This document shows, in pieces, positions 13,811-64,000 of a stretch of 64,000 nucleotides of DNA. Made by a program: the position numbers and the translations under genes. The stretch is from the NCBI RefSeq assembly GCF_902652985.1, contig NC_047028.1:1116001-1180000 (forward strand), given 5' to 3'. Position 1 is the stretch's first letter; each line of letters begins with the position of its first letter. Under the pieces are notes generated by a model. That model was not told the origin of the DNA. It searched no databases and was given only the letters and a program-made list of their open reading frames with translations. The DNA comes from Pecten maximus (Eukaryota).

Positions 13811-16160
13811 TATGTAGGTAGTGAACACATATTTCACAAAGATTGCGGATTATGTTCACTTTGTGTACAAGTAGCGAAGACAGATTAGATTTACTGTATG
13901 TATGTACTGAAAACAGATTTCACAAAGATTGTGGATTAGATTTACTGTATGTAGGTAGTGAAAACAGATTTCACAAAGATTGTGGATTAGATTTACTGTA
14001 TGTAGGTGGTGAAAATAGATTTCAAAAACTATACGGATTATATTTACTGTATGTAGGTAGTGAAAACAGATTTCAAAAACTATACGGATTAGATTTACTA
14101 TATGTAGGTAGTGAAAACAGATTTCACAAAGATTGTGGATTAGATGTACTGTATGTAGGTAGTGAAAACAAATTTCACAAAGATTGCGGATTAGATTTAC
14201 TGTATGTAGGTAGTGAAAACAGATTTCAAAAACTATACGGATTAGATTTACTGTATGTAGGTAGTGAAAACAGATTTCAAAAATTATACGGATTAGATTT
14301 GCTGTATGTAGGTAGTGAAAACAGATTTCACAAAGATTGTGGATTATATTTACTGTATGTAGGTGGTGAAAACAGATTTCACAAAGATTGTGGATTAGAT
14401 TTACTGTATGTAGGTAGTGAAAACAGATTTCACAAAGATTGTGGATTAGATTTACTGTATGTAGGTAGTGAAAACAGATTTCACAAAGATTGTGGATTAG
14501 ATTTACTGTATGTAGGTAGTAAAAACAGATTTCACAAAGATTGCGGATTATATTTACTGTATGTAGGTAGTGAAAACAGATTTCAGAAAGATTGTGGATT
14601 AGATTTACTGTATGTAGGTGGTGAAAATAGATTTCAAAAACTATACCGATTAGATTTACTGTATGTAGGTAGTGAAAACAGATTTCACAAAGATTGTGGA
14701 TTAGATTTACTGTATGTAGGTAGTGAAAACAGATTTCACAAAGATTGTGGATTAGATTTACTGTATGTAGGAAGTGAAAACAGATTTCACAAAGATTGTG
14801 GATTAGATTTACTGTATGTAGGTAGTGAAAACAGGTTTCACAAAGATTGCGGATTAGATTTACTGTATGTATGTAGTGAAAACAGATTTCACAAATATTG
14901 TGGATTAGATTTACTGTATGTAGGTAGTGAAAACAGATTTCACAAAGATTGTGGATTAGATTTACTGTATGTAGGTAGTGAAAACAGATTTCACAAAGAT
15001 TGTGGATTAGATTTACTGTATGTAGGTAGTGAAAACAGATTTCACAAAGATTGTGGATTAGATTTACTGTATGTAGGTAGTGAAAACAGATTTCACAGAG
15101 ATTGTGGATTAGATTTACTGTATGTAGGTAGTGAAAACAGATTTCAAAAACTATACGGATTAGATTTACTGTATGTAGGTAGTGAAAACAGATTTCAAAA
15201 ACTATACGGATTAGATTTGCTGTATGTAGGTAGTGAAAACAGATTTCACAAAGATTGTGGATTAGATTTACTGTATGTAGGAAGTGAAAACAGATTTCAC
15301 AAAGATTGTGGATTAGATTTACTATATGTAGGTAGTGAAAACAGATTTCACAAAGATTGTGGATTAGATTTACTATATGTAGGTAGTGAAAACAGATTTC
15401 ACAAAGATTGTGGATTAGATTTACTGTATGTAGGTAGTGAAAACAAATTTCACAAAGATTGCGGATTAGATTTACTGTATGTAGGTAGTGAAAACAGATT
15501 TCACAAAGATTGCGGATTAGATTTACTGTATGTAGGTAGTGAAAACAGATTTCACAAATATTGTGGATTAGATTTACTGTATGTAGGTAGTGAAAACAGA
15601 TTTCACAAAGATTGTGGATTAGATTTACTGTATGTAGGTAGTGAAAACAGATTTCACAAAGATTGTGGATTAGATTTACTATATGTATGTAGTGAAAACA
15701 GATTTCACAAAGATTGTGGATTAGATTTACTGTATGTAGGTAGTGAAAACAGATTTCACAAAGATTGTGGATTAGATTTACTGTATGTATGTAGTGAAAA
15801 CAGATTTCACAAAGATTGTGGATTAGATTTACTATATGTATGTAGTGAAAACAGATTTCACAAAGATTGTGGATTAGATTTACTGTATGTAGGTAGTGAA
15901 AACAGATTTCACAAAGATTGTGGATTAGATTTACTATATGTAGGTAGTGAAAACAGATTTCAAAAACTATACGGATTAGATTTACTGTATGTAGGTAGAG
16001 AAAACAGATTTCAAAAACTATACGGATTAGATTTACTGTATGTAGGTAGTGAAAACAGATTTCAAAAACTATACGGATTAGATGTACTTGATGTAGGTAG
16101 TGAAAACAGATTTCACAAAGATTGTGGATTAGATTTACTGTATGTAGGTGGTGAAAATAG
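13811..16160. repeat. Tandem array, 51-bp unit, ~46 copies, two subtypes (cacaaagattgt vs caaaaactatac)
   Basis: 17-aa periodicity of the spurious ORFs on both strands. Unit read directly. Confidence 0.97.
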
Positions 16161-17591
16161 AGGTTCCCCAACGAGTGGAGATTGTATTATATCACTTTCA
16201 TCCAACTCGAATTAGTTAGCTAAAGCTCGTGTCTTTTCAAAATTAGAAAATTAACTTACGAGAGTTGGATAAAAACGATATACAATCGTCATGAGTAGGG
16301 GAACTTGTTTATCCCATAACTTCTTTACTTACAAATGTAAGCTTGTCAAGTTCAAATTCTCCCAACGTAGCAACTAAATTCCGTGAACCAAATCACTACG
16401 CGACAAAATATAGGTCGTTATGAACGAAAGCTTATCATCTATTTTAGATGCCCGACTCATATCTTCGGTACTTTATTTGTAAATGATATACTTTTACAAA
16501 GCGAAATATTAGTCTGACAACCCTTGTGTCTGTGTGATTTATTGATAGGTAACTTGTTTAAACGACTCCGCTCAAATAAATATCAAAGACGACACCGTCA
16601 TCGCGAAGTCGAACGTCATCCCTGAATATTAGACTAATCATTGTCAGATTCAATTATCGCTCCTTTCCTGGATTTCGTAGGTATGCTATTACTGGTTATT
16701 GTGATGTTAAATGTTCATTCTGAGATTTATTCATTCAAGACACCGTGCATTTCAACAAATATTTCGGAAACCGAGCTGGAGTGCTAAGCAATATGTAGCC
16801 GATTTCACGTCTGTCAGTATGCTTACACGAAATCTCGTCAGGATACTGACATGAGACAAATGTTCCAAACCGATTTTTACATTTTTGTGTTTGGGATATA
16901 GACATCTATATTTTCGCAATAAAGGTAAGTGGAATGATAAGAAAGTGTTTTTCTGATGGTACAATATCCGTTGCGAATGACACCGAACTAAAAGGGGAGC
17001 TCTAGGCTTAGACCTACGTTAGATGCCGCGACCGTTTCATTCAACTGACTACGATTAGAGACAGCGATTTAACCATTTTGTACTACATCTGTTCATTGTT
17101 TTGATAATTTATTCATGGCTATCGGGGTCCACTGCATATCGAGAATCAAGGGAGAGGTGGGGTGTTAGTTTGGTTCGCTAGGCATGTAATCAACGCAATA
17201 TCTCGCTTCCGTGCGTCGTCTATTTTACCAAATTTTTTATCAAATTATATTTCGTACGTCTCAAACCCCAGATTGATCGAAATTTCCATGAGGAAAATCC
17301 TCTCAACTAGTTATGCTAATGTTGACCACTGACAAATCCACAAAACGTGTCCATGTTGATCTGTTGAAGACAGACGACAAAAACAAAAGAATTAAGTGGG
17401 GGTAGTGAAACTAGTCCGTAGTCAAAGGCCGGAGATTTGCCAATAAGATTTGTTGAGGGTCACAAATGACCAATCGGAGGCTTAGAAAGTGGTTTAACAC
17501 TGCGGTGTGTAAACAAAAACAATAACACACTGCTATCAATTTCCTCACGTGCCATATCAGTTGTGAAACAAGCGTAGTTATGGGATAAACA
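16161..17591 (+). mobile_element. 1.43-kb split-hairpin element inserted into the 51-bp array without a TSD
   Basis: Hairpin 16161-16305 (gttcccc/ggggaac, gattgta/tacaatc, atccaactc/gagttggat). Perfect 16-bp inverted pair tgtttatcccataact (16306-16321) / agttatgggataaaca (17576-17591). The array resumes in register at 17592. Confidence 0.8.
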
Positions 17592-17845: not shown

Positions 17846-18131
17846 TGGAAGGTGGTGGATTAACATTTGTAACACCTCATTAGTAACATTATTTTAGTGA
17901 TTATTATGATTTTGTTATTTATTTACATCTATTGATGTATGATAATCCTATAGTTTTAATGAATACGATCCGTAAGTATCCTAGGTATTGAAAAGTGTTC
18001 ATTCATCTTTCCGTAGTTTAATTGTGCCTGCTGACAAAACTAAATGATGTACTTATTTGTTTAAATTGATTCTATTGCATGTTAGACAACCTACTATCAA
18101 ATAACCAATAACAAACTGTGACGTCACACTG

Positions 18132-18164
18132 ATGGGTTGTTCGGCATCACAGGTTCGGAGAAAT
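18132..18164 (+). CDS. Coding exon 1 of the 5-exon gene (MGCSASQVRRN)
   Basis: ATG at 18132, strong donor gtaagt at 18165, phase 0. Confidence 0.75.
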
Positions 18165-21100
18165 GTAAGTTATGTTTTAACAATTTATGACATTACAACT
18201 TAGTTATAGACATTTCTTTTGAATTCTGTGCTCACGGTTTAATTTAGCTCGAATCAAAACTGAGTATCCCTAATATTAATGTTAAGTACATTTTTGTAGC
18301 TGGTTCTGTGTCCCACTGTGACACGTGTGTCTCGTGCCAAACATTATTATTTCATTAACGGATATTCTATCGGTAAAACATATTACGGGTAAAAACAGCA
18401 CATTTTAAAATACAATAATGTATAAGATTCAAGTGGAAGGAAATACATTAATCAAAATTCTTTTAACTCAATATCATTGTACATCATTACGTTTACAATT
18501 ACGTTTCCAGGGGACACAAGAACAGTCTGGAGTGGTACCAGTGGGTTTATATGTTGGCAGAAAGAACGGAACAAAGCAGTTCGACCCTAACAATGAAAAC
18601 AGATTTATAATCCAATATTATAATGGCAAGCACAAAATGTACCTTAAACTTGAACCGGGTAATTTGGTCGGCTCATATCTTACTGACTTGGATTCCTCAT
18701 TATGCCGTACGTATATTATCGCCAACATCACGTCACTCTTAACATCTACTTCCATATTATAATGTCAGATATTCCGTGTCTCGCCACAGCCTCATTTTTT
18801 TATCTATACTTGTTAGGTGGATCAATATCCTAAATGTTAAGCAATCATATATTGTTTACTGTCAGATATTTTTTCATAAACTTTTTTTCTAATATTCTAA
18901 GATAGACTTTTAAGCTTGGCGGCGTCGCATAGTAATGTTAGATAAGCTTTGGCTTATTAAAACGTCGTATGTTTTATAGATTGTCCTAACGCCACACAGA
19001 GCTCATTTCTTTATGACAGTGTTATTTTGTTATTTCAATCAACATTTGATGATTTAAATACGAATATGTGTCACCATTCCTAAGGATTTGGACGTGACAT
19101 CATAGTAACATATCTTTATTGTGGTGTTTCTGAATCATAACTATACATAGCTGATAGAATGTACTGGAAGAGTGACTTCAACACTTATATCCTTAATTAG
19201 GGCTTTTCACCAATGGTGAAAAGACCTATTGTTTTCGTTATGTTTCTTATTCTTATTATTCTTCTGCCGTTTTTGTGGCGTATTAATCTTTTGATTGGTA
19301 AAGATTAGGCTAATTGTCTTTCATGTATATTGTTGGCCAAGGTATGAACATGTGTCAAAAACTTTTAAAAGTAGGTCAAGAATCCAATATGGACGCCATG
19401 ACGTCATTCCTAAAAAAATTAAAATTACGCTATTTTGAATATTTTTGTTCTATTGGGTATGCCCACAACTCACATTTTCCGTTTCTTCTAAAATTTCACC
19501 AGTGCGATTCAGCACAAACTTTGACAAAATGACTTTGAGATATGGTACTGACCAAGTCTTGTTATCTTGGGGTCGGTCCAAAATCCAATATGGCCGTCAT
19601 GACGTCATGTATTGAAAAGATTAAAATGGCCATAACTCACAAAGGATTCATTTTACAGAGATCACGTAATTATGTTATTTGCTATGCTAAGTTTGCTATG
19701 AGGTCAAAGGTCACCAAATTTCCAACTTTTTTATTTTACAGATATTTTTAAATAGATCAATGCAGTATGTCATTCTGATTATTTTGGAATCTTCAGTTTT
19801 TCTTTAGCACTTCCGGTTTAGGTGGTACGCCATTTTGAAAATTGTCATGATTGCTCAATCATTATTAACATTCTACAAATAATAAGGACATCTTCTAAAA
19901 AAACCAAGAGGCCTAGGGACTTGATATTTGGCCAGTAACATGCTTTGGTGAAGGGCTACCAAGTTTGTTCTAAAGAAAGACCTTAATCTAAATTCAAGGT
20001 CACAGGTGTCAAATTGGTTACACTCTTGAAACGACTTCTGAATAACCAGGGAGGCACAGGGAGTTGATATTCGGTCTGTAGCATGCTTGAATAACGGTCT
20101 AACAAGTTAGTTAAAATGATTGACCTTTGCCTACATTCAAGGTCATAAAGGTAAATGATCCCTTAAAAATGGTCAAAGGTGTGAAAAGCCCATCAAATTG
20201 TCCATGACAATTTCTAGTTTATATTTAGTTACAAAGTTTAAAATGTTAAAACTTGCTAACTAAACGTAGCGGAAATGTAATTGTTGTAATATTAATTTTT
20301 CATTAATTGATTTCAGCGTATTGCGCCGTGTTTAGAAAGCATATCGTTTTGGAACAGTCACGGCCCGTAATCTGCCACACCATCACATATACAGGCGCTG
20401 ATAGGCGGTCCCGGTTTACGGTGTCCATTACTCCGGACTTCACATTGGAATTGCTGGTATTTAATTAATATTATCAGATATTATAATTACATCCTAGCTT
20501 TTCAAAGACGGGTGTGCAGTTATCAATTTGTCGGTGCATGATCTAGTGGCAGACTGAACGAAAATGAAAATGAAATCCGTATGAAAATAAAAATATAAAT
20601 ATGCATAAAAAAGGGAAGTCAAGGGGAGAACAGAACGCAATCCACTTGTTAAATCCGTCGGTCTACATCTAACGGATAGAATTAGATTTGGATGGTCAAG
20701 TTTTAAGGTTGACGGCTGAAGAGAAAGAAAACAGTTGTGTACAACATATATCATGAACATCTATCTATAAAATTGGAATTCATTATCAGATATGTATTAT
20801 TAAACATCTATCTATAACATTGGAATTCATTATCAGATATTTATCATTAAACATCTATCTATAACATTGGAATTCATTATCAGATATGTATTATTAAATA
20901 TCTATCTATAACATTGGAATTCATTATCAGATATGTATTATTAAACATCTATCATTGGGATATATTAATAGACATTTAATATTGGAATCTATTATTAAAC
21001 ATCTATCATTGGAATTTTTTAATAGACATTTACTATTGGAATCTATTATTAAACATCTATCATTGGAATATATTAATAGACATTTAATATTGGAATCTAT

Positions 21101-24100
21101 TATTAAACATCTATTATTGGAATTTATTAATAGACATTTAATATTGGAATCTATTATTAAACATCTATCATTGGAATTTATTAATAGACATTTACTATTG
21201 GAATCTATTATTAAACATCTATCATTGGAATATATTAATAGACATTTAATATTGGAATCTATTATTAAACATCTATTATTGGAATTTATTAATAGACATT
21301 TAATATTGGAATCTATTATTAAACATCTATCATTGGAATTTATTAATAGACATTTACTATTGGAATCTATTAGTAAACATCTATCATTGGAATATATTAA
21401 TAGACATTTAATATTGGAATCTATTATTGGAATTTATTAATAGACATTTAATATTGGAATCTATTATCAAACATCTATTATTGGAATATTAATTAATAGA
21501 CATTTAATATTGGAATCTATTATTAAACATCTATCATTGGAATATATTAATAGACATTTAATATTGGAATCTATTATTAAACATCTATCATGGGAATATA
21601 TTAATAGACATTTAATATTGGAATATATTATTAAACATCTATTATTGGAATATATTAATAGACATTTAATATTGGAATATATTATTAAACATCTATTATT
21701 GGAATTTATTAATAGACATTTAATATTGGAATCTATAATTAAACATTTATCATTGGAATATATTAATATACATTTAATATTGGAATATATTATTGGAATT
21801 TATTAATAGACATTTAATATTGGAATCTATTATTAAACATTTATCATTGGAATATATTAATATACATTTAATATTGGAATCTATTATTGGAATTTATTAA
21901 TAGACATTTAATATTGGAATCTATTATTAAACATTTATCATTGGAATATATTAATAGACATTTAATATTGGAATCTATTATTAAACATCTATCATTGGAA
22001 TTTATTAATAGACATTTACTATTGGAATCTATTATTAAACATCTATCATTGGAATATATTAATAGACATTTAATATTGGAATCTATTATTTAACATCTAT
22101 TATTAGAATTTATTAATAAACATTTAATATTAGAAACTATTATTAAACATCTATCATTGGAATTTATTAATAGACATTTACTATTGGAATCTATTATTAA
22201 ACATCTATCATTGGAATATATTAATAGACATTTAATATTGGATTCTATTATTAAACATCTATTATTGGAATATATTAATAGACATTTATTATTGGAATCT
22301 ATTATTAAACATCTTTTATTGGAATTTATTAATAGACATTTGATATTGGAATATATTATTAAACATCTATCATTAAACATTTATTATACGATATCTTTTA
22401 TTAGACCTCAACTATCAGACATCTAGTATTAAAATGTTTCATCAATTAAAGAGTTGGGGTCGTGGTATATCTATGTAAGCCCCGGCTCATTTTACTTATA
22501 TATATATTAGGAATGAAGACGGCCGTCAGAGTAGTAATAAAACGGGTTATTAGAAACATTTCTTATCAACACAAGAAGAGTAATATAAAATATGATAATG
22601 TTATCAATGACTTTATCATATGCTCAACAGGAGGATATTCGCCCGGCAGCATTCCTCCATTGTTTATTTAAACTTCACCAAAATTCGGCTGGTCTGATGA
22701 AATTGGAGAGCATGATGTATAATGGTAAGGAAACATAGTAAATGAATACATTTTACGTACATTGTAGCTTTTATTACTATACTTGCATAACCAGCCATTG
22801 TTTGATCTACATGTAAAACTGGTGTTTTATTTTAACAACACGATTTTAAGTGTGAGTGCAGCTGAAAAAGTACAACTTTGTCGGAGATATCAATCTGATT
22901 TGTCGTAATAATACTGATGGTCATGATGTATGTGATGTACATGGTGTGTGATGTACATGGTGTGTGTGATGTACATCGGGTGTGTGATGTACATGGTGTA
23001 TGTGTGATGTACACGGTGTGTGTGATGTACATGGTGTGTGATGTACATGGTGTATGTGATGTACATGGTGTGTGTGATGTACATGGTGTGTGTGATGTAC
23101 ATGGTGTGTGTGATGTACATAGTGTGTGTGATGTACATGGTGTGTGTGATGTACATGGTGTGTGTGATGTACATGGTGTATGTGATGTACATGGTGTGTG
23201 TGATGTTCTGGGGTAAGAGATGTACATGGTGTGTGTGATGTACATGGTGAATGTGATGTGTATCGTGTGTGTGATGTACATGGTGTGTGTGATGTACATG
23301 GTGTGTGTGATGTACATGGTGTGTGTGACGTACATGGTGTATGTGATGTACATGGTGTATGTGATGTGTATGGTGTATGTGATGTACATGGTGTGTGTGT
23401 GATGTACATGGTGTGTGTGATGTACATGGTGTGTGTGTGATGTACATGGTGTATGTGATGTACATGGTGTGTGTGATGTACATGATGTATGTGTGATGTA
23501 CATGGTGTATGTGATGTACATAGTGTGTGTGATGTACATGATGTATGTGATGTACTGGGGTAAGAGATGTACATGACGTGTGTGATGTACATGGTGTGTG
23601 TGATGTACATGGTGTGTGTGATGTACATGGTGTGTGATGTACATGGTGTGTGTGATGTACATTGTGTAGTTGTAAATGGTGTGTGTGATGTACTTGGTGT
23701 ATGTGATGTACATGGTGTGTGTGATGTACATGGTGTGTGTGATGTACATGGTGTATGTGATATACATGGTGTATGTGATGTACATGGTGTGTGTGATGTA
23801 CATGGTGTGTGTGATGTACATGGTGTGTGTGATGTACATGGTGTGTGTGACGTACATGGTGTATGTGATGTACATGGTGTATGTGATGTGTATGGTTTAT
23901 GTGATGTACATGGTGTGTGTGTGATGTACATGGTGTGTGTGATGTACATGGTGTGTGTGTGATGTACATGGTGTATGTGATGTACATGGTGTGTGTGATG
24001 TACATGATGTATGTGTGATGTACATGGTGTATGTGATGTACATAGTGTGTGTGATGTACATGATGTATGTGATGTACTGGGGTAAGAGATGTACATGACG

Positions 24101-27048
24101 TGTGTGATGTACATGGTGTGTGTGATGTACATGGTGTGTGTGATGTACATGGTGTGTGTGATGTACATTGTGTAGTTGTAAATGGTGTGTGTGATGTACT
24201 TGGTGTATGTGATGTACATGGTGTGTGTGATGTACATGGTGTGTGTGATGTACATGGTGTATGTGATATACATGGTGTATGTGATGTACATGGTGTGTGT
24301 GATGTACATGGTGTGTGTGATGTACATGGTGTATGTTACATGTATGTACATGGTGTATGTTATATACATGGTGTATGTGATGTACATGGTGTGTATGATG
24401 TACATGGTGTGTGCGATGTACATGGTATATGCTATGTACATGGTGTGTGATGTACATGGTGTATGTGATGTGTATGGTGTGTGTGATGTACATGGTGTAT
24501 GCGATGTACATGGTGTGTGTGATGTACATGGTGTGTGTGATGTACTGGGGTAAGAGATGTACATGGTGTGTGTGATGTACATGGTGTATGTGATGTACAT
24601 AGTGTGTGTGATGTACATGGTGTATGTGATGTACTGGGGTAAGAGATGTACATGACGTGTGTGATGTACATGGTGTGTGTGATGTACATGGTGTGTGTGA
24701 TGTACATGGTGTGTGTGATGTACATTGTGTAGTTGTAAATGGTGTGTGTGATGTACTTGGTGTATGTGATGTACATGGTGTGTGTGATGTACATGGTGTG
24801 TGTGATGTACATGGTGTATGTGATATACATGGTGTATGTGATGTACATGGTGTGTGTGATGTACATGGTGTGTGTGATGTACATGGTGTATGTTACATGT
24901 ATGTACATGGTGTATGTTATATACATGGTGTATGTGATGTACATGGTGTGTATGATGTACATGGTGTGTGCGATGTACATGGTATATGCTATGTACATGG
25001 TGTGTGATGTACATGGTGTATGTGATGTGTATGGTGTGTGTGATGTACATGGTGTATGCGATGTACATGGTGTGTGTGATGTACATGGTGTGTGTGATGT
25101 ACTGGGGTAAGAGATGTACATGGTGTGTGTGATGTACATGGTGTATGTGATGTACATAGTGTGTGTGATGTACATGGTGTATGTGATGTACATGGTGTGT
25201 GACGTACATGGTGTGTGTGATGTACATGGTGTGTGAGATGTACATGGTGTATGATGTACATAGTGTATGTGATGTACATGGTTTGTGATTGACATGGTGT
25301 GTGTGATGTACATGGTGTATGTGGTGTACATGGTGTATGTCATGTACATGATGTATGTCATGTACATGGTGTATGTGTGATGTACATGGTATGTGTGATG
25401 TACATGGTGTGTGTGATGTTCATGTTGTGTGTGATGTTCATGATGTGTGATGTACATGGTGTGTGTGATGTACATGGTGTATGTGATGTACTGGGGTATG
25501 TTATGTACATGTTGTGTGTGATGTACATGGTATATGTGGTGTACATGATCTGTGTGATGTACATGGTGTATGTGATGTACATGGTGTGTGATGTACATGG
25601 TATATGCTATGTACATGGTGTGTGATGTACATGGTGTTTGTGATGTACGTGGTGTATGTGATGTACATAGTGTGTGTGATGTACATGGTGTGTGTGATGT
25701 ACATGGTGTGTGTGATGCACATGGTGTGTGTGATGTACATGGTGTATATGATGTACATGGTGTGTGACGTACATGGTGTGTGTGATGTACATGGTGTATG
25801 TGATATACATGGTGTATGTGATGTACATGGTGTGTGTGATGTACATGGTATATGCTATGTACATGGTGTGTGATGTACATGGTGTATGTGATGTGTATGG
25901 TGTTTGTGATGTACATGGTGTATGCGATGTACATGGTGTGTTTGATGTACATGGTGTGTGTACTGGGGTTAAGAGATGTACATGGTGTGTGTGATGTACA
26001 TGGTGCGTGATGTACATGGTGTATGTGATGTACATGGTGTGTGACGTACATGGTGTGTGTGATGTACATGGTGTGTGAGATGTACATGGTGTATGATGTA
26101 CATAGTGTGTGTGATGTACATGGTGTATGTGATGTACATGGTGTGTGATGTACATGGTATATGCTATGTACATGGTGTGTGATGTACATGGTGTTTGTGA
26201 TGTACATGGTGTGTGATGTACATGGTGTGTGATGTACATGGTATGTGATGTACATGGTATATGCTATGTATATGGGGTGTGTGATGTACATGGTGTATAT
26301 GATTGTGTTTAAGTGATTGTTTATTGGTGATTATGTATTGGTGATTGTGAATTAGTGATTGTGTACCGGTGATTGTGTACCGGTGATGGTGTACCGGTGA
26401 TTGTGTACCGGTGATTGTGTATTGGTGATTATGCTTTGGTGATTGTGAATTAGTGATTGTGTACCGGTGATTGTGTACCGGTGATGGTGTACCGGTGATT
26501 GTGTAATTGGTGATTGTGTATTGGTGATTATGCTTTGGTGATTGTGAATTAGTGATGGTGTACCGGTGATTGTGTAATTGGTGATTGTGTATTGGTGATT
26601 ATGCTTTGGTGATTGTGAATTAGTGATTGTGTACCGGTGATTGTGTATTGGTTATACTTTGTCTCAGTCATAGGACGGGACCGGAAGCCGCCATCATAGG
26701 TGCAGATGTCGTCGATCGAAACAGAGTACATCCTATTTTTACTTAATTAATTGTTTTTCGTTTTCAGGGGTATACCTCTTTGTTGATAATGACACAAACA
26801 AAGCCGTGTTTCGCGTCCATAGACAACTTTCTGACTTACCGAGCCAACTGTTCAGGTTATTTCCCTGCCCAGATCGTACTGTCAGCACAACAACGATCGC
26901 GGTAAACAGATTTTATCGGCAATCAAATCGTCGCTTATGTGGCAACAATAGTGATCGTGAATTGGATATTGAATCTGTAACAAATGTTGAATGGGAGGAA
27001 AGGGCTGTAACAAGTACCGCCAATAGAGACTATGTTACATTTGACTAA
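18132..27048 (+). CDS. 5-exon gene, 231 aa, MGCxxS N-terminus, putative beta-trefoil (IL-1-like) protein; join(18132..18164,18511..18658,20317..20456,22631..22724,26768..27048)
   Basis: All four introns are GT-AG and phases chain 0,1,0,1 into an uninterrupted 696-nt frame: MGCSASQVRRN GTQEQSGVVPVGLYVG...YLKLEP AYCAVFRKH...PDFTLELL EDIRPAAFLHCLFKLHQNSAGLMKLESMMYN GVYLFVDNDTNKAVFRV...DYVTFD*. Gene structure is well supported; fold assignment is inference. Confidence 0.82.
18511..18658 (+). CDS. Coding exon 2 of the 5-exon gene
   Basis: Acceptor tttccag at 18510, donor gtaatt at 18659; only one frame is open. Confidence 0.8.
19193..20220 (+). mobile_element. Helentron-associated interspersed element (HINE / DINE-1-like), intronic
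   Basis: 5' subTIR gggcttttcac with adjacent partial inverted copy gtgaaaagacc, then a (ttc/tta) microsatellite and two ~143-bp internal repeats (19907-20150). The 3' end has subTIR gtgaaaagccc (20181-20191), hairpin aaattgtc-cat-gacaattt and ctagtt. Confidence 0.85.
20317..20456 (+). CDS. Coding exon 3 of the 5-exon gene
   Basis: Acceptor atttcag at 20316, donor gtattt at 20457; phase 1 in, phase 0 out; GC-richer than flanks. Confidence 0.8.
20756..22380. repeat. AT-rich intronic array: four 47-bp units followed by 54-bp units (dimer of two 27-bp subunits)
   Basis: attggaatctattattaaacatctatc alternating with attggaatatattaatagacatttaat. Confidence 0.95.
22631..22724 (+). CDS. Coding exon 4 of the 5-exon gene (EDIRPAAFLHCLFKLHQNSAGLMKLESMMYN)
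   Basis: Acceptor caacag at 22630, donor gtaagg at 22725; phase 0 in, phase 1 out. Confidence 0.8.
22925..26300. repeat. Intronic minisatellite, 16-20-bp unit (gtgtgtgatgtacatggt), with ~500-560-bp higher-order duplications
   Basis: Identical ORFs at 24100 and 24657 (557-bp offset). Marker gtagttgtaaatgg recurs three times. Confidence 0.97.
26300..26652. repeat. Minisatellite, ~14-bp unit (ggtgattgtgtacc and variants)
   Basis: Direct reading. Confidence 0.9.
26768..27048 (+). CDS. Terminal coding exon of the 5-exon gene
   Basis: Acceptor tttcgttttcag at 26767; phase 1; includes track ORF 26806..27048. Confidence 0.8.
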
Positions 27049-27066
27049 CGTGAAGAATTAACGATT

Positions 27067-44784: not shown

Positions 44785-45570
44785 ATGTCAAAAAAGCAGA
44801 AAGATTTTCTGAAGAAGATATGTTATGATCCAAAACATGTGTTGGGATTCACTGGCCCCAAAAGGTTGTATGAGGGTACATGTATAAAAAAGAAAAGCAA
44901 ATTGAAGAGAAGTCGATCACGGGTCACTGCTTGGTTGCAGAATTAAGATCCTTATAGTGTAAGACGATAAGTTAGACACAAAACACCAAAAGTCAAAACT
45001 CCTTTGGTGAGTGTGGACTACATGTGGGATGCTGATTTAGCAGATGTCTCCAATATCAAAGACTATAATGAAGGCATCACTTTCTTACTAGTTGTTGTGG
45101 ATTATTTTTCAAGTTATGCTTGGGTACTACCCCTTAAAAACAAGAAGGCTACCACAGTGTTGGAGGCTTTCAAAAAGATATTTGCAAAACGTCAGCCCAT
45201 CATCATCAGATCAGATCATGGAAAAGAGTTCTTAAGCAATGCATTTCAAAAGCATTGCAAAGCCATTGGGGTCACCCACATTGCAAGTCACAGTGCTCAT
45301 AAAGCTTCATTTGCTGAATCATTTATAGGGAAGTTGAAAAATATTTTGTACAGATACTTGCATTCCAATCAAACGTTTACATACGCTCAAGAATTACAAA
45401 AAGGTCTACAAATCAAAAGAAACGAAGTGGAAAATAGAAGACGTCTTAAAAGTTAAGAGAGCTAAAGGAAAGAAATTAGCGTTGTTTAGATGGTTAGGAT
45501 GGCCAAAAAAAACATTGATTCCTGGATAGATTATGATGACATTGAAGTGCCCATAAAAACTATAAATAAG
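44785..45570 (+). pseudogene. Maverick/Polinton rve (DDE) integrase with C-terminal chromodomain, disrupted
   Basis: MSKKQKDFLKKICYDPKHVLGFTGPKRLY is in frame with ORF 45004 across stops at 44944 and 44968. Catalytic motifs WDADL, IRSDHGKEF and AESF. An internal deletion precedes YAQELQK, then a frameshifted chromodomain KIEDVLKVK...LFRWLGWPKK..DSWI. Confidence 0.9.
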
Positions 45571-45598
45571 CTGAAAAAACACCAAAGTAAAGAAAACC

Positions 45599-46323
45599 AT
45601 GGCTTACGTGTGTCAATTTTGTTCTAAAACGTACACGTTGAAAAACTATCTGGATCAACATATCAGAAGAAAACATTTCAAAGATCTACGTGAAATACCG
45701 TGCTCATCAGCTGGCAAAATTACCTCTCAGAAGGAATTTGATATAGTTAATGTACCTGAACACATGTTACCCCCAGTACCTAGAGGACATTTCTTGCCCT
45801 GGAAACATCCCTTTACCTGTATCATAGCAGCTCCCACAGGATGTGGAAAAACAACGTTTGTGAAGAGGTTTATAGACAACATTCAACAGATGATGACTCC
45901 CATACCCGATAAAATCCTGTGGTGTTATGGAGAATATCAAACAATCTTGATAATTTGATAGTGATAGATGATTTGATGTCTGAAGTTAACTCTGACGTGA
46001 CGTCATTATTAAGAGTCATCATTGCAACATCAGCGTCATGTATATAGTTCAGAATTTATTTTGTCAGAGTAAAAAAACATAGAGACATCAGTTTAAATAC
46101 TCATTACATTGTTTTGATGAAAAATCCTAGAGATTCGTCACAGGTCAGGTGTTTGTCCCATGAGATGTTTCCAAGTAAAACTTTACTGATGGAAGCCTAC
46201 AAGGATGCTACTCTTCATCCTCATGGATATCTGTTAGTAGATTTGAAACAAAACACTCCTTCAGATCTCAGATTACGTACATGTATATTTCCTGGAGAGT
46301 ATCAGTTTGTGCATGTCCCCTAA
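45599..46323 (+). pseudogene. C2H2 zinc finger plus A32/FtsK-HerA-type DNA packaging ATPase, disrupted
   Basis: CQFC-x12-HIRRKH; Walker A region HPFTCIIAAPTGCGKTT; out-of-frame Walker B LIVIDDLM; YIVQNLF, ISLNTHYIVLMKNPRD, AYKDAT..PHGYLLVDL and RLRT motifs. Confidence 0.9.
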
Positions 46324-59744: not shown

Positions 59745-62700
59745 ACTCATCCACCTCTATAAAACACTCATCTACATTGTACTTTCATAAAACACTCATC
59801 TACCTTCACAAAACACTCATCTACCACTATAAAACACTATCTACCACTATAACACACTCATCTACCACTATAAAACGCTCATCTACCACTATAAAACAAT
59901 CATCTACCGCTATAAAACACTATCTACCACTATAAAATACTCATCCACCGCTATAAAATGCTCATGTTCCCCTATAAAACTCTCATCTACATTGTACTTT
60001 CATAAAACACTCATCTACCACTATAAAACACTCATCTACATTGTACTTTCATAAAACACTCATCTACCGCTATAAAACACTCATCTACCGCTATAAAACA
60101 CTCATCTACCACTATAAAACACTCATCTACCGCTATAAAACACTCATCTACCACTATAAAACACTCATTTACCACTATAAAACACTCATCTACCACTATA
60201 AAACACTCATCTACCGCTATAAAACACTCATCTACCACTATAACACACTCATCTACCACTATAAAACACTCATCTACCACTATAAAACACTCATCTACCG
60301 CTATAAAACACCCATCTACCACTATAAAACACTCATCTACCACTGTAACACACTCATCTACCACTATAAAACACCCATAATCCACTATAAAACACTCATC
60401 TACCACTATAAGACACTCATTTACTACTATAAAACACCCATCTACCACTATAAAACACTCATTTACCACTATAAAACACTCATCTACCACTTTAAAACAC
60501 TCATCTACCGCTATAAAGCACTCATCTACCACTATAAAACACTCATCTACCACTATAAAACACTCATCTACTGCTATAAAACACTCATCTACCACTATAA
60601 AACACCCATAATCCACTATTAAACACTCATCTACCGCTATAAAACACTCATCTACCACTATAAAACACTAATATACCACTATAAAACACTCATCTACCAC
60701 TATAAAACACTCATCTACCATTATAAAACACTCATCTACCATTATAAAACACTCATCTATCACTATAAAACACTCATCTACCACTATAAAACACCCATAA
60801 TCCACTATAAAACACTCATCTACCACTATAAAACACTCATCTACCACTATAAAACACTCATCTACCACTATAAAACACTCATCTACCACTATAAAACACC
60901 CATAATCCACTATAAAACACTCATCTACCACTATAAAACACTCATCTATCACTATAAAACACTCGTCTACTACTATAAAACACTCATCTACCGCTATAAA
61001 ACACTCATCTACCACTATAAAACACTCATCTACCGCTATAAAATACTCATTTACCTTCATTAAATGTCATATACCCTAATACAATACTCATCCACCGCTA
61101 TAAAATGCTCATTTTCCCCTATAAAACTCTACATTGTACTTTCATAAAACACTCATCTAACACTATAAAACACTCTTCTACATTGTACTTTCATAAAACA
61201 CTCATCTACCTCTATAAAACACTCATCTACCGCTATAAAACACTCATCTACCACTATAAAACACTCATCTACTGCTATAAAACACTCATCTACCACTATA
61301 AAACACCCATAATCCACTATAAAACACTCATCTACCGCTATAAAACACTCATCTACCACTATAAAACACTCATATACCACTATAAAACACTCATCTACCA
61401 CTATAAAACACTCATCTATCGCTATAAAACACTCATCTACCACTATAAAACACCCATAATCCACTATAAAACACTCATCTACCGCTATAAAACACCCATA
61501 ATCCACTATAAAACACTCATCTACCACTATAAAACACTCATCTACCACTATAAAACACTCATCTACCGCTATAAAACACTCATCCACCACTATAAAACAC
61601 TCATCTACCATTATAAAACACTCATCTACCACTATAACACACTCATCAACCACTATAAAACACTCATCTACCACTATAAAACACTCATCCAACACTATAA
61701 AACACTCATCTACCATTATAAAACACTCATCTACCACTATAAAACACTCATCTACCACTATAAAACACTCATCTACCGCTATAAAACACTCATCTACCAC
61801 TATAAAACACTCATCCACCACTATAAAACACTCATCTACCGCTATAAAACACTCATCTACCACTATAAAACACTCATCTACCACTATAAAACACTCATCT
61901 ATCACTATAAAACACTCGTCTGCTACTATAAAACACTCATCTACCGCTATAAAACACTCATCTATCACTATAAAACACTCGTCTACTACTATAAAACACT
62001 CATCTACCGCTATAAAACACTCATCTACCACTATAAAACACTCATCTACCGCTATAAAACACTCATCTACCACTATAAAACACTCATCTACCGCTATAAA
62101 ACACTCATCTACCACTATAAAACACTCATCCACCACTATAAAACACTCATCTACCATTATAAAACACTCACTACCACTATAAAACACTCATCTACCACTA
62201 TAAACACTCATCTACCGCTATAAAACACTCATCTACCACTATAAAACACTCATCCACCACTATAAAACACTCATCTACCGCTATAAAACACTCATCTACC
62301 ACTATAAAACACTCATCTGCCACTATAAAACACTCATCTACCACTATAAAACACTCATCTACCATTATAAAACACTCATCTACCACTATAAAACACTCAT
62401 CTACCACTATAAAACACTCATCTACCGCTATAAAACACTCATCTACCACTATAAAACACTCATCCACCACTATAAAACACTCATCTACCGCTATAAAACA
62501 CTCATCTACCACTATAAAACACTCATCTACCACTATAAAACACTCGTCTGCTACTATAAAACACTCATCTACCGCTATAAAACACTCATCTATCACTATA
62601 AAACACTCGTCTACTACTATAAAACACTCATCTACCGCTATAAAACACTCATCTACCACTATAAAACACTCATCTACCGCTATAAAACACTCATATACCA

Positions 62701-64000
62701 CTATAAAACACTCATCTACCGCTATAAAACACTCATCTACCACTATAAAACACTCATCCACCACTATAAAACACTCATCTACCATTATAAAACACTCATC
62801 TACCACTATAAAACACTCATCTACCACTATAAAACACTCATCTACCGCTATAAAACACTCATCTACCACTATAAAACACTCATCCACCACTATAAAACAC
62901 TCATCTACCGCTATAAAACACTCATCTACCACTATAAAACACTCATCTACCACTATAAAACACTCATCTACCACTATAAAACACTCATCTACCACTATAA
63001 AACACTCATCTACCACTATAAAACACTCATCTACCGCTATTAAACACTCACCTACCGCTATAAAACACTCATCTACCGCTATAAAATACTCATTTACCTT
63101 CATTAAATGTCATATACCCTAATACAATACTCATCCACCGCTATAAAATGCTCATTTTCCCCTATAAAACTCTCATCTACATTGTACTTTCATAAAACAC
63201 TCATCTACCACTATAAAACACTCATCTACATTGTACTTTCATAAAACACTCATCTACCGCTATAAAACACTCATCTACCATTATAAAACACTCATCTACC
63301 GCTATAAAACACTCATCTACCACTATAACACACTCATCTACCACTATAAAACACTCATCTACCACTATAAAACACTCATCTACCACTATAAAACACTCAT
63401 CCACCACTATAAAACACTCATCTATCGCTATAAAACACTCATCTACCACTATAAAACACCCATCTACCACTATAAAACACTCGTCTACCACTATAAAACA
63501 CTCATCTACCACTATAAAACACTCATCTACCGCTATAAAACACTCATCTACCACTATAACACACTCATCTATCGCTATAAAACACTCATCCACCACTATA
63601 ACACACTCATCTACTACTATAAAACACTCATCTACTACTATAAAACACTCATCTACCGCTATAAAACACTCATCTACCACTATAAAACACTCATCTACCG
63701 CTATAAAACACTCATCTACCACTATAAAACACTCATCTACCGCTATAAAACACTCATCTACCACTATAAAACACTCATCTACCGCTATAAAACACTCATC
63801 TACCACTATAAAACACTCATCTACCGCTATAAAACACTCATCTACCACTATAAAACACTCATCTACCGCTATAAAACACTCATCTACCACTATAAAACAC
63901 TCATCCACCACTATAAAACACTCATCTACCATTATAAAACACTCACTACCACTATAAAACACTCATCTACCACTATAAACACTCATCTACCATTATAAAA
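59745..64000. repeat. Tandem array, 21-bp unit (ctataaaacactcatctacca), with kb-scale higher-order duplication; runs off the window end
   Basis: 7-aa periodic spurious ORFs. The unique spacer tactcatttaccttcattaaatgtcatataccctaatacaatactc recurs at ~61044 and ~63086 (diverged at ~59650). Confidence 0.97.

What the first reader, a model, noticed from the sequence alone, without database searches (positions are those of the whole stretch)
18132..27048. Hidden 5-exon gene: lipid-anchored (MGCxxS) protein with an IL-1-like beta-trefoil signature
Seen: five short exons buried among satellites splice in phase into a 231-aa ORF with no signal peptide. Knowledge: MGCxxS is the classic N-myristoylation plus palmitoylation motif. 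F-x6-8-(F/L)ES-x2-(Y/F)-x-G-x-(Y/F)L is the hallmark of the last trefoil unit in IL-1-family cytokines and some other beta-trefoils (AbfB, fascin). Here it reads LFKLHQNSAGLMKLESMMYNGVYLFVD, followed by V-F and 'SQLFRL' strands like the IL-1 C-terminal strands. Inference: a leaderless, membrane-tethered IL-1-like protein in a mollusc, a group where such cytokines are hard to detect by sequence search.
Basis: partly seen in the sequence, partly recalled or inferred. Interest (0 to 1): 0.8.

Follow-up and report, generated by a model that had tools for sequence, protein, structure and literature searches.

The report
Lipid-tagged IL-1-like scallop trefoil gene
This is a real, transcribed five-exon gene of the great scallop (already annotated as "uncharacterized LOC117342603"). 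Its 247-residue, leaderless protein starts with a textbook fatty-acid anchoring motif, and its core is predicted to fold like interleukin-18/interleukin-1, so it may be a very divergent, membrane-tethered relative of the IL-1 cytokines.

Summary
The gene is real. RNA-derived contigs skip introns at 18164>18511, 18706>20317 and 20456>22631. An exon-5 search returned a 247-aa RefSeq protein, XP_033760690.1, "uncharacterized protein LOC117342603 [Pecten maximus]", that contains all five exons. So the gene is not hidden.

An in-frame TAA in the transcribed 5'UTR fixes the MGCSAS start. No signal peptide or membrane segment is present.

No homologue was found among 1.8 and 5.8 billion proteins, in Pfam or in PDB sequences. 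AlphaFold without an alignment failed twice.

For the core (residues 18-190), the 20 nearest named clusters are all IL-18/IL-33/IL-1 (score 0.95, 202/256 features). The Atlas model matches IL-18 best (TM 0.74/0.70), ahead of other trefoils. The two central introns have phases 1 and 0, as in IL-1beta genes.

IL-1-type "IL-1anc" proteins were published for this species in 2025-26, and this scan met one 24 Mb away on the same contig (s1-793012). This PDZ-less, acylation-tagged protein looks like a further, divergent variant. IL-1 membership and lipidation remain predictions.

The parts
18099..18131 (+). 5'UTR (minimum extent). It contains an in-frame TAA at 18102-18104 and a perfect CRE palindrome TGACGTCA at 18119-18126.
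   Evidence: X14 contig record 7 is collinear from 18099 to 18164. Stop and CRE found by script.
18132..18164 (+). Exon 1 coding part, 33 nt: MGCSASQVRRN (predicted N-myristoyl-Gly2 / S-palmitoyl-Cys3 motif). Donor GTAAGT; the following intron is phase 0.
   Evidence: Joint 18164>18511 GT..AG. Translation maps to P0001 residues 1-11.
18511..18706 (+). Exon 2, 196 nt, residues 12-76 (first trefoil unit). The true donor is at 18706 (GTACGT), not 18658. The following intron is phase 1.
   Evidence: X1 record 1 and X2 record 14 run to 18706. Joint 18706>20317. Translation.
20317..20456 (+). Exon 3, 140 nt, residues 77-123, flanked by a phase-1 and a phase-0 intron.
   Evidence: Joints 18706>20317 and 20456>22631 in X1 record 1. 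Phases.
22631..22724 (+). Exon 4, 94 nt, residues 124-154, carrying LES (148-150). The following intron is phase 1.
   Evidence: X1, X2 and X14 contigs end this piece at 22724/5 and go on for 329 nt. Translation.
26768..27048 (+). Exon 5 coding part, residues 155-247 plus TAA. It holds the last trefoil strands (VYLFVD, AVFRVH, QLFRLF), then a 57-residue acidic tail. The last ~26 codons align to degenerate 52-bp satellite units.
   Evidence: 100% match to P0001 residues 156-247. X1 holds all sampled words. Satellite alignment.
27049..27096 (+). 3'UTR (minimum, inferred from the 329-nt contig remainder). It runs into the 52-bp satellite at 27025-28971.
   Evidence: Contig lengths, table 8. TRF.
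20756..22374 (.). AT-rich 47/54/108-bp satellite inside intron 3.
   Evidence: TRF. No RNA contigs lie on it.
22922..26652 (.). 18-bp (22922-26296) and 14-bp (26300-26652) GT-rich tandem arrays filling intron 4.
   Evidence: TRF.

Best explanation
LOC117342603 of Pecten maximus is an expressed five-exon gene for a 247-residue cytosolic (leaderless) protein with three parts.

1. An N-terminal MGCSAS motif. It is predicted to be N-myristoylated on Gly2 and palmitoylated on Cys3, which would pin the protein to the cytosolic face of membranes (inferred).
2. A ~170-residue beta-trefoil core (residues ~20-190). Its closest relatives by predicted fold, by language-model features and by gene structure are IL-1 family cytokines, IL-18 above all (predicted).
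3. A 57-residue acidic, probably disordered tail, partly built from the neighbouring satellite (shown at DNA level).

The most likely reading is a very fast-evolving, PDZ-less offshoot of the IL-1 superfamily, whose 'IL-1anc' branch is already known in this scallop. Like other leaderless IL-1s it would leave the cell by a non-classical route: here on shed vesicles, after cleavage from its anchor, or on cell lysis. It would then signal damage or infection to Ig-TIR (IL-1R-like) receptors. Release and signalling are inference only.
For: Gene and ORF:
- Spliced contigs from runs of two studies were laid (X1/X2 and X14), and exon-5 words are held by runs of six studies.
- All five exons map to the database protein P0001 = XP_033760690.1.
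- Only the used frame is open in exons 2-5 (exon 5 bar its own terminal stop).

Start and localisation:
- An in-frame TAA at 18102 in the transcribed leader, with no ATG between, fixes Met-Gly-Cys.
- Gly2, Cys3 and Ser6 fit the N-myristoyltransferase / dual-acylation consensus of G-alpha-i and Src-family kinases (established knowledge).
- Maximum Kyte-Doolittle 19-residue hydropathy is 0.92, so there is no signal peptide or membrane segment.

Fold:
- The Atlas model has pTM 0.59.
- Whole protein: IL-18 0.93 by features and first by structure.
- Core 18-190: IL-18 0.95 with 202/256 features. The 20 best named clusters are all IL-18/IL-33/IL-1. The next trefoil families reach at most 0.87/112.
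- By structure, IL-18 scores TM 0.74/0.70 over 146 residues, and all ten rows are trefoils.
- Weak internal repeats appear at trefoil spacing: LKLEPGNLVGSYL / MKLESMMYNGVYL and AVFRKH / AVFRVH.

Gene structure:
- Intron phases are 0,1,0,1.
- IL-1beta genes have I,I,0 around the three trefoil exons (PMC4880838). So the two introns inside the trefoil (1, then 0) match.
- The phase-0 intron lies 24 residues before LES, the (F/L)ES motif that marks strand 9 in IL-1/IL-1anc (PMC13736523).

Context:
- IL-1anc genes of P. maximus lie on chr14 (PMC13736523).
- This gene is on the same 38.9-Mb contig as a PDZ+trefoil gene noted earlier (s1-793012).
Against: - No sequence-level homology to anything. Pfam gives 0 families even at E<=10. 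PF00340 finds nothing in the genome, though that search rang in no control genome either and so shows nothing. PDB sequences give nothing meaningful. There is no relative among 5.8e9 or 1.84e9 proteins and no paralogue in the genome.
- AlphaFold2 single-sequence models are useless (pLDDT 32 and 30). The fold therefore rests on one source, ESM, whose two searches count as one line of evidence.
- Structural margins over other trefoils are small (0.74 against 0.65-0.69).
- There is no PDZ domain, no pro-domain and no evident caspase site. A C-terminal extension is atypical for IL-1s.
- As I recall the PROSITE IL-1 signature, it is not met (M151 and N154 where [ASLV] and P are expected).
- The three variant codons seen in run X14 are all amino-acid changing (P37L, R92V, I95L). 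This fits either immune-type rapid evolution or weak constraint.
- No similarity to the IL-1anc-type locus 24 Mb away.
Confidence: 0.5

Rival explanations
1. It is a genuine beta-trefoil but not an IL-1 homologue or cytokine. It would be an intracellular, membrane-anchored adaptor that works on the cytosolic face of membranes, in the manner of the myristoylated trefoil hisactophilin (actin-membrane linker) or fascin/FGF-homologous-factor-like proteins, and is never secreted.
For: - The dual-acylation motif points to a permanent inner-leaflet location (established knowledge of MGC motifs).
- There is no pro-domain, caspase site or PDZ.
- AbfB, ricin-B and FGF models superpose almost as well as IL-18 (TM 0.65-0.69 against 0.74).
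- All trefoils share strand patterns, so the LES-type motif may be convergent.
- Pfam IL1 does not match.
Against: - Language-model features separate IL-1 family clusters (165-202 shared features, 20 best named hits) sharply from other trefoil families (112 or fewer).
- No FGF or fascin cluster is among the 30 nearest by features.
- Intron phases and their position relative to LES fit IL-1 genes (PMC4880838, PMC13736523).
Confidence: 0.3
2. It is a young, weakly constrained lineage-specific gene whose product has no stable trefoil fold. On this view the IL-18 likeness is an artefact of language-model prediction on an orphan sequence.
For: - No homologue anywhere and a single copy.
- AlphaFold2 pLDDT about 30. 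The Atlas model is only of medium confidence (pLDDT 0.61).
- All observed variant codons are nonsynonymous.
- The C-terminal ~26 codons are derived from a satellite.
- Shuffled proteins reach 0.95 about once in 100 (tool note).
Against: - A 247-codon ORF kept open and in phase over five exons in a 35%-GC region.
- The signal gets stronger, not weaker, when the tail is removed (0.93 rises to 0.95; 172-180 rises to 202 features).
- Ten of ten structural neighbours are trefoils.
- Internal repeats occur at trefoil spacing.
- The intron-phase pattern is IL-1-like.
- Exon-5 words are held by runs of several studies and spliced contigs by runs of two.
Confidence: 0.12
3. It is a C1q/TNF-like or other jelly-roll fragment, suggested by the local likeness of residues 22-68 (KMYLKLEPGNLVGS) to the C-terminal strands of cerebellin-4.
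For: PDB sequence hit 5h4b (Cbln4) at residues 22-68, E 0.66. C1q-domain genes are very numerous in bivalves (general knowledge).
Against: - The E-value is not significant.
- Pfam C1q does not match.
- There is no C1q paralogue match in the genome for exon 2.
- The motif sits at the wrong end of the protein for a C1q domain.
- All structural neighbours are trefoils.
Confidence: 0.03

Closest known systems
IL-1 family cytokines, especially IL-18 (Pfam PF00340; IL-33 PF15095)
   Same: - Leaderless, ~150-170-residue predicted 12-strand beta-trefoil.
- (F/L)ES-type motif followed by aromatic-hydrophobic strands.
- Two central trefoil introns of phase 1 and 0.
- Nearest clusters by ESM features and structure.
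   Different: - No Pfam or HMM match.
- No N-terminal pro-domain or caspase site. The trefoil starts ~20 residues from the N-terminus.
- A 57-residue C-terminal tail.
- An extra phase-1 intron right after LES.
- An N-terminal MGC acylation motif, unknown in the family. As far as I know, IL-1alpha is only reported as myristoylated on internal lysines.
IL-1anc proteins (PDZ + IL-1 trefoil) of Eumetazoa, including Pecten maximus PmaxIL-1.1-1.3 (PMC13736523; preprint PMC12338702)
   Same: - Same species and same chromosome (chr14 / contig C14).
- Leaderless, IL-1-type trefoil with an L/FES motif.
- Undetectable by BLAST or HMMER.
- A few published members also lack the PDZ domain.
   Different: - No PDZ domain.
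- PmaxIL-1.1 has its trefoil at aa 126-290, so it is a different protein.
- No detectable similarity to the PDZ-trefoil locus 24 Mb away.
- Whether XP_033760690.1 is PmaxIL-1.2 or 1.3 could not be checked, because the supplementary tables are not held. The published search strategy (PDZ first, then BLAST) would probably not reach it.
Dual-acylated 'MGC' proteins (G-alpha-i/o, Lck, Fyn)
   Same: Met-Gly-Cys start with Ser at position 6. This is the consensus for co-translational N-myristoylation followed by palmitoylation of Cys3.
   Different: Only the first six residues are alike. The rest of the protein is unrelated. Lipidation is not shown.
Hisactophilin (Dictyostelium), a myristoylated beta-trefoil
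   Same: N-myristoyl anchor plus a single trefoil domain in a cytosolic protein (general knowledge).
   Different: Hisactophilin is ~118 residues and histidine-rich. It was not among the nearest ESM neighbours. No comparison could be run here.
FGF family (PF00167)
   Same: Trefoil fold. Some members are leaderless. The Atlas model superposes at TM 0.65/0.58.
   Different: No FGF cluster is among the 30 nearest by features. No Pfam FGF match.

Membership tests
IL-1 superfamily | 12-strand beta-trefoil fold closest to IL-1 family structures | tested here: met
   ESM Atlas model (pTM 0.59): IL-18 is first, TM 0.74/0.70 over 146 residues, and all ten rows are trefoils. Caveat: this is one predicted model of medium confidence. 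AlphaFold2 without an alignment was uninformative, so no search against solved structures was possible.
IL-1 superfamily | Match to the family sequence profile (Pfam IL1 PF00340 / IL33_bt PF15095) | tested here: not met
   hmmscan of P0001 at E<=10 returns 0 families. PF00340 finds nothing in the genome, but that search rang in no control either. The published IL-1anc proteins are also said to escape such searches (PMC13736523).
IL-1 superfamily | (F/L)ES motif in strand 9 | tested here: met
   A single LES at residues 148-150, followed by MMYNG-VYLFVD. As I recall the stricter PROSITE IL-1 signature, it is not satisfied (M151, N154, F159, V160).
IL-1 superfamily | [quoted passage not shown] | tested here: met
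   Introns E2|E3 phase 1 and E3|E4 phase 0, the latter 24 residues before LES. IL-1beta genes: the last three introns are 1,1,0 and the trefoil lies in the last three exons (PMC4880838). Conservation is also stated for IL-1anc (PMC13736523). Two phases match by chance about once in eight.
IL-1 superfamily | No signal peptide (most members) | tested here: met
   The first 30 residues are hydrophilic (mean KD -0.51). Maximum 19-residue hydropathy is 0.92.
IL-1 superfamily | Binding to an Ig-TIR receptor and cytokine activity | not testable with these tools
   Needs recombinant protein and receptor assays.
IL-1anc subfamily | N-terminal PDZ domain before the trefoil | tested here: not met
   No PDZ family in Pfam. 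Only ~20 residues precede the predicted trefoil. [quoted passage not shown]
N-myristoylated / Cys3-palmitoylated proteins | Initiator Met followed by Gly2, small uncharged residue 3 (here Cys), Ser/Thr at position 6, no Pro at position 7 | tested here: met
   MGCSASQ. The start codon is fixed by the in-frame TAA at 18102 inside the transcribed leader.
N-myristoylated / Cys3-palmitoylated proteins | Lipid actually attached; membrane localisation lost in G2A/C3A | not testable with these tools
   Needs metabolic labelling and mutants.
FGF family | Match to PF00167 or nearest neighbours FGF | tested here: not met
   No Pfam hit. FGF is absent from the 30 nearest clusters by features. By structure it scores TM 0.65/0.58, below IL-18.

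The most novel reading that the evidence does not exclude
This would be the first IL-1-superfamily protein carrying a co-translational myristoyl-palmitoyl anchor. An IL-18-like trefoil would be parked on the inner membrane leaflet and exported on shed vesicles, or freed by cleavage or lysis. That would be an invertebrate solution to the long-standing puzzle of how leaderless IL-1 cytokines reach the outside. It would also be a fourth, PDZ-less scallop IL-1 missed by the published survey.
Probability: 0.3. Interest if true: 0.75.

Novelty: new variant of a known kind. Interest (0 to 1): 0.55.

Why it matters
IL-1-type cytokines outside vertebrates were recognised only in 2025-26, and only through their PDZ domain plus structure prediction. 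The authors themselves say that very divergent members may have been missed.

A PDZ-less, sequence-orphan, IL-18-like trefoil in the same species would show that the invertebrate IL-1 repertoire is wider than the published set. It would also show that protein language-model features can find such members.

The predicted lipid anchor gives a simple, testable handle (G2A/C3A) on how a leaderless IL-1-like protein is positioned at membranes and released. This bears on the unresolved mechanism of unconventional IL-1 secretion.

If the IL-1 reading fails, the gene is still a clean example of a fast-evolving, taxon-restricted trefoil gene whose tail was recruited from a satellite.

Tried and rejected
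- **Exon-by-exon Pfam scan** and **exon-by-exon searches of the genome**: nothing but the gene itself.
- **Big HMMER search with exon 5**: besides the gene's own protein, only a 2256-aa CUB-repeat protein (P0002; E 4.9e-5, 29% identity, six repeats). I take this for a repeat-inflated chance match.
- **Word search with P0001**: no relatives.
- **PDB sequence search**: a trimeric PCNA fusion (three 6-bit stretches), a COMM-domain protein and cerebellin-4. None is significant, and the C1q idea was rejected.
- **AlphaFold2** on the full length and on residues 18-190, without an alignment: pLDDT 32 and 30. Fold search was therefore not run, as it would be meaningless.
- **Looking for the published PmaxIL-1 genes near the window** through PDZ profiles PF13180 and PF17817: no hit on contig C14.
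- **The earlier-noted PDZ-trefoil locus** was fetched (L024/L025). It showed no significant similarity to P0001.
- **Supplementary tables** of the IL-1anc paper and preprint are not held. No paper mentions LOC117342603.
- **Rfam** on 17-29 kb: nothing.
- **The 139-aa ORF at 39865-40284**: no Pfam family and no real likeness to P0001.
rejected by three contigs that read through it.
Full report

**Is the observation there?** Five segments have canonical acceptor and donor sites:
- 18132-18164
- 18511-18706
- 20317-20456
- 22631-22724
- 26768-27048

Cumulative lengths give intron phases 0, 1, 0, 1 and an ORF of 744 nt. In exons 2 to 5 only the used frame is open (exon 5 bar its own terminal stop). 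The introns and the downstream flank are indeed filled with tandem arrays.

Contigs of four public runs were laid on 18000-22760.
- They skip 18164>18511 (X14), 18706>20317 (X1; X14 with a one-letter offset) and 20456>22631 (X1), each GT..AG. These runs therefore hold spliced RNA.
- X1 record 1 (771 nt) covers exons 2, 3 and 4 and then runs on for 329 nt. X2 and X14 contigs show the same 329-nt remainder.
- X1 holds all sampled words of 26768-27060. This fits exon 5 plus about 48 nt of 3'UTR, up to the point where the 52-bp satellite would break an assembly.
- The exon 4>5 joint itself lay outside the stretch laid and was not seen directly.

All three contigs that reach 18658 read through it to 18664 or 18706.

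The exon-5 peptide searched against 1.84 billion representatives found a 247-aa protein, 100% identical over residues 156-247. Its sequence contains every exon translation at positions 1, 12, 78, 124 and 156. It is XP_033760690.1, 'uncharacterized protein LOC117342603 [Pecten maximus]', on a 38.9-Mb contig. So the gene is real and expressed, but annotated rather than hidden, and it encodes 247 aa, not 231.

**The ends of the protein.**
- The X14 contig is collinear with the genome from 18099. An in-frame TAA lies at 18102 and no ATG lies between it and 18132. The product of this transcript must therefore begin Met-Gly-Cys-Ser-Ala-Ser.
- By established knowledge of N-myristoyltransferase substrates (Gly2, small uncharged residue 3, Ser/Thr at 6, no Pro at 7) and of Cys3 palmitoylation in G-alpha-i/o and Src-family kinases, this is a good dual-acylation motif. 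Lipidation itself is inferred.
- There is no hydrophobic leader or membrane segment.
- At the other end, residues 191-247 are acidic (pI 5.3) and hydrophilic.
- From about 26970 the DNA aligns to two degenerate units of the 52-bp satellite that follows the gene. So roughly the last 26 codons and the stop were recruited from satellite sequence.

**Relatives.** None was found.
- Pfam gives no family for the exons or the whole protein, even at E<=10.
- PDB sequences give only insignificant or repeat-inflated hits.
- The word search of 5.8 billion proteins finds only the protein itself.
- Its 90% cluster has one member.
- Exons 2, 3 and 5 are single copy in the 918-Mb genome.
- The only other hit of the big search is a CUB-repeat protein that I regard as chance.

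**Fold.** AlphaFold2 without an alignment failed for the whole protein (pLDDT 32) and for residues 18-190 (pLDDT 30). No model was fit for Foldseek or VIA, and I did not run them.

The ESM Atlas holds this sequence with a model of medium confidence (pTM 0.59, pLDDT 0.61).
- **Whole protein.** Of the 30 nearest clusters by features, most are IL-18, IL-33 or IL-1 (0.93; 172-180 of 256 features). The nearest model is IL-18 (TM 0.54/0.70), followed only by other trefoils.
- **Core, residues 18-190.** The signal rises. IL-18 scores 0.95 with 202 shared features. The 20 best named clusters are all IL-1 family, and then there is a drop to ricin-B and fungal trefoil inhibitors at 0.87 or less with 112 or fewer features. 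By structure, IL-18 scores TM 0.74/0.70 over 146 residues, against 0.65-0.69 for AbfB, ricin-B and FGF.
- **The tool's own calibration.** 0.95 is reached by about 1 shuffled protein in 100. At least 170 shared features is typical of true family members (9 in 10) and rare for chance hits or distant relatives (1-2 in 10). These figures were not measured for parts of proteins, and the two searches count as one source.
- **Internal repeats.** A weak internal repeat at about two trefoil units' distance (LKLEPGNLVGSYL / MKLESMMYNGVYL; AVFRKH / AVFRVH) fits a pseudo-threefold trefoil.

I rate 'beta-trefoil' at about 0.85 and 'IL-1 superfamily homologue' at about 0.55-0.6.

**Gene structure.** IL-1beta genes carry their twelve strands in the last three exons, with intron phases I, I, 0 (PMC4880838). 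The two introns inside the trefoil are thus 1 then 0, as here (E2|E3 = 1, E3|E4 = 0).

The exon between them is 140 nt here. From memory, unverified, it is about 131 nt in human IL1B. The phase-0 intron lies 24 residues before LES.

[quoted passage not shown] The match of two phases alone has a chance probability of roughly one in eight, so this is supporting evidence, not proof.

Also from memory only, the spacing of the last four strands resembles that of human IL-1beta. I give that as a lead, not as a result.

**What is already known.** PMC13736523 (preprint PMC12338702) describes 'IL-1anc' proteins across Eumetazoa.
- They have an N-terminal PDZ domain plus a C-terminal IL-1 trefoil with an (F/L)ES motif and no signal peptide, and they are undetectable by BLAST or HMMER.
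- The set includes PmaxIL-1.1, 1.2 and 1.3 of Pecten maximus, on chr14. [quoted passage not shown]
- The authors note that very divergent members may have been missed.
- PmaxIL-1.1 has its trefoil at aa 126-290, so it is not this protein.
- Whether 1.2 or 1.3 is this protein cannot be told, because the supplementary tables are not held.
- The published route (PDZ first, then BLAST/PSI-BLAST) would hardly reach a PDZ-less protein with no detectable paralogue.

An earlier finding of this scan (s1-793012) places a PDZ+trefoil gene on the same contig, 24.4 Mb further on. I fetched that DNA and found no significant similarity to P0001. Sharing a chromosome is a mild point in favour (1 in 19 by chance).

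**How it most likely works.**
- Shown: the transcript, the splice pattern, the ORF and the start codon.
- Predicted: the trefoil core, nearest to IL-18/IL-1.
- Inferred: co-translational myristoylation and palmitoylation that hold the protein on the cytosolic leaflet; release on vesicles, after cleavage between anchor and trefoil, or on lysis or pore formation; and action on Ig-TIR receptors as a damage or infection signal.

The main rival is an intracellular membrane-bound trefoil adaptor that is never secreted (0.3). A weakly constrained orphan without a stable fold is less likely (0.12). In its favour: the three variant codons in run X14 are all amino-acid changing (P37L, R92V, I95L) and the tail is satellite-derived. 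Against it: the long multi-exon ORF, the strengthened signal on the core alone, and the intron pattern.

**Verdict.**
The gene, the motifs and the satellites are right. One donor, the length and 'hidden' are wrong.
Leaderless: yes. Trefoil and IL-1-likeness: supported by one predictive source plus gene structure. Family membership at sequence level: not met. Lipid anchor: a strong motif, untested.
- Against the 2025-26 literature this is no longer a first mollusc IL-1, but a probable new, PDZ-less and acylation-tagged variant.

Noticed in passing
window 19900-20225 (intron 2): RNA contigs of all four runs pile up here at very high word depth (up to ~13,000). They show back-joints and loose ends unlike the window. 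It looks like an abundantly transcribed dispersed repeat or transposon fragment, not part of the gene.
   Followed up: no
window 18119-18126: A perfect palindromic cAMP-response element, TGACGTCA, lies 6 nt before the start codon, inside the transcribed leader. No NF-kB or AP-1 consensus occurs in the 1.5 kb upstream.
   Followed up: partly
window 26970-28971: A 52-bp satellite (37 units, each with an AATAAA) starts inside the coding end of exon 5. The last ~26 codons and the stop align to degenerate units. So the C-terminal tail and probably the poly(A) signals come from the satellite.
   Followed up: partly
window 39865-40284 (- strand): A single open frame of 139 aa with a strand-rich, non-repetitive sequence. 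It has no Pfam family and no real likeness to P0001. It is unexplained.
   Followed up: partly
window 45004-45958 (+ strand): ORFs with an integrase-like stretch (150 aa) and a zinc-finger/P-loop-like stretch (119 aa) lie inside the element another reader called Maverick/Polinton-like (s1-802653).
   Followed up: no
window 13843-16215 and 60032-64000: Long tandem arrays give artefactual ORFs of 200-790 aa on both strands. Strong GC skew over 58-64 kb.
   Followed up: no
P0001 residues 22-68: A local likeness to the C-terminal strands of cerebellin-4 (a C1q domain): KMYLKLEPGNLVGS here against a near-identical run in 5h4b. E 0.66, not significant.
   Followed up: partly
L025 3345-3456 (G000:C14:25626344-25626455): In the earlier-noted PDZ-trefoil locus, a candidate exon bounded by AG and GTACGT reads '...TTFQRKDTGFLAVDERENV'. 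This would be a strand 9/10-like stretch with a variant of the FES motif. It is not significantly similar to this gene.
   Followed up: partly
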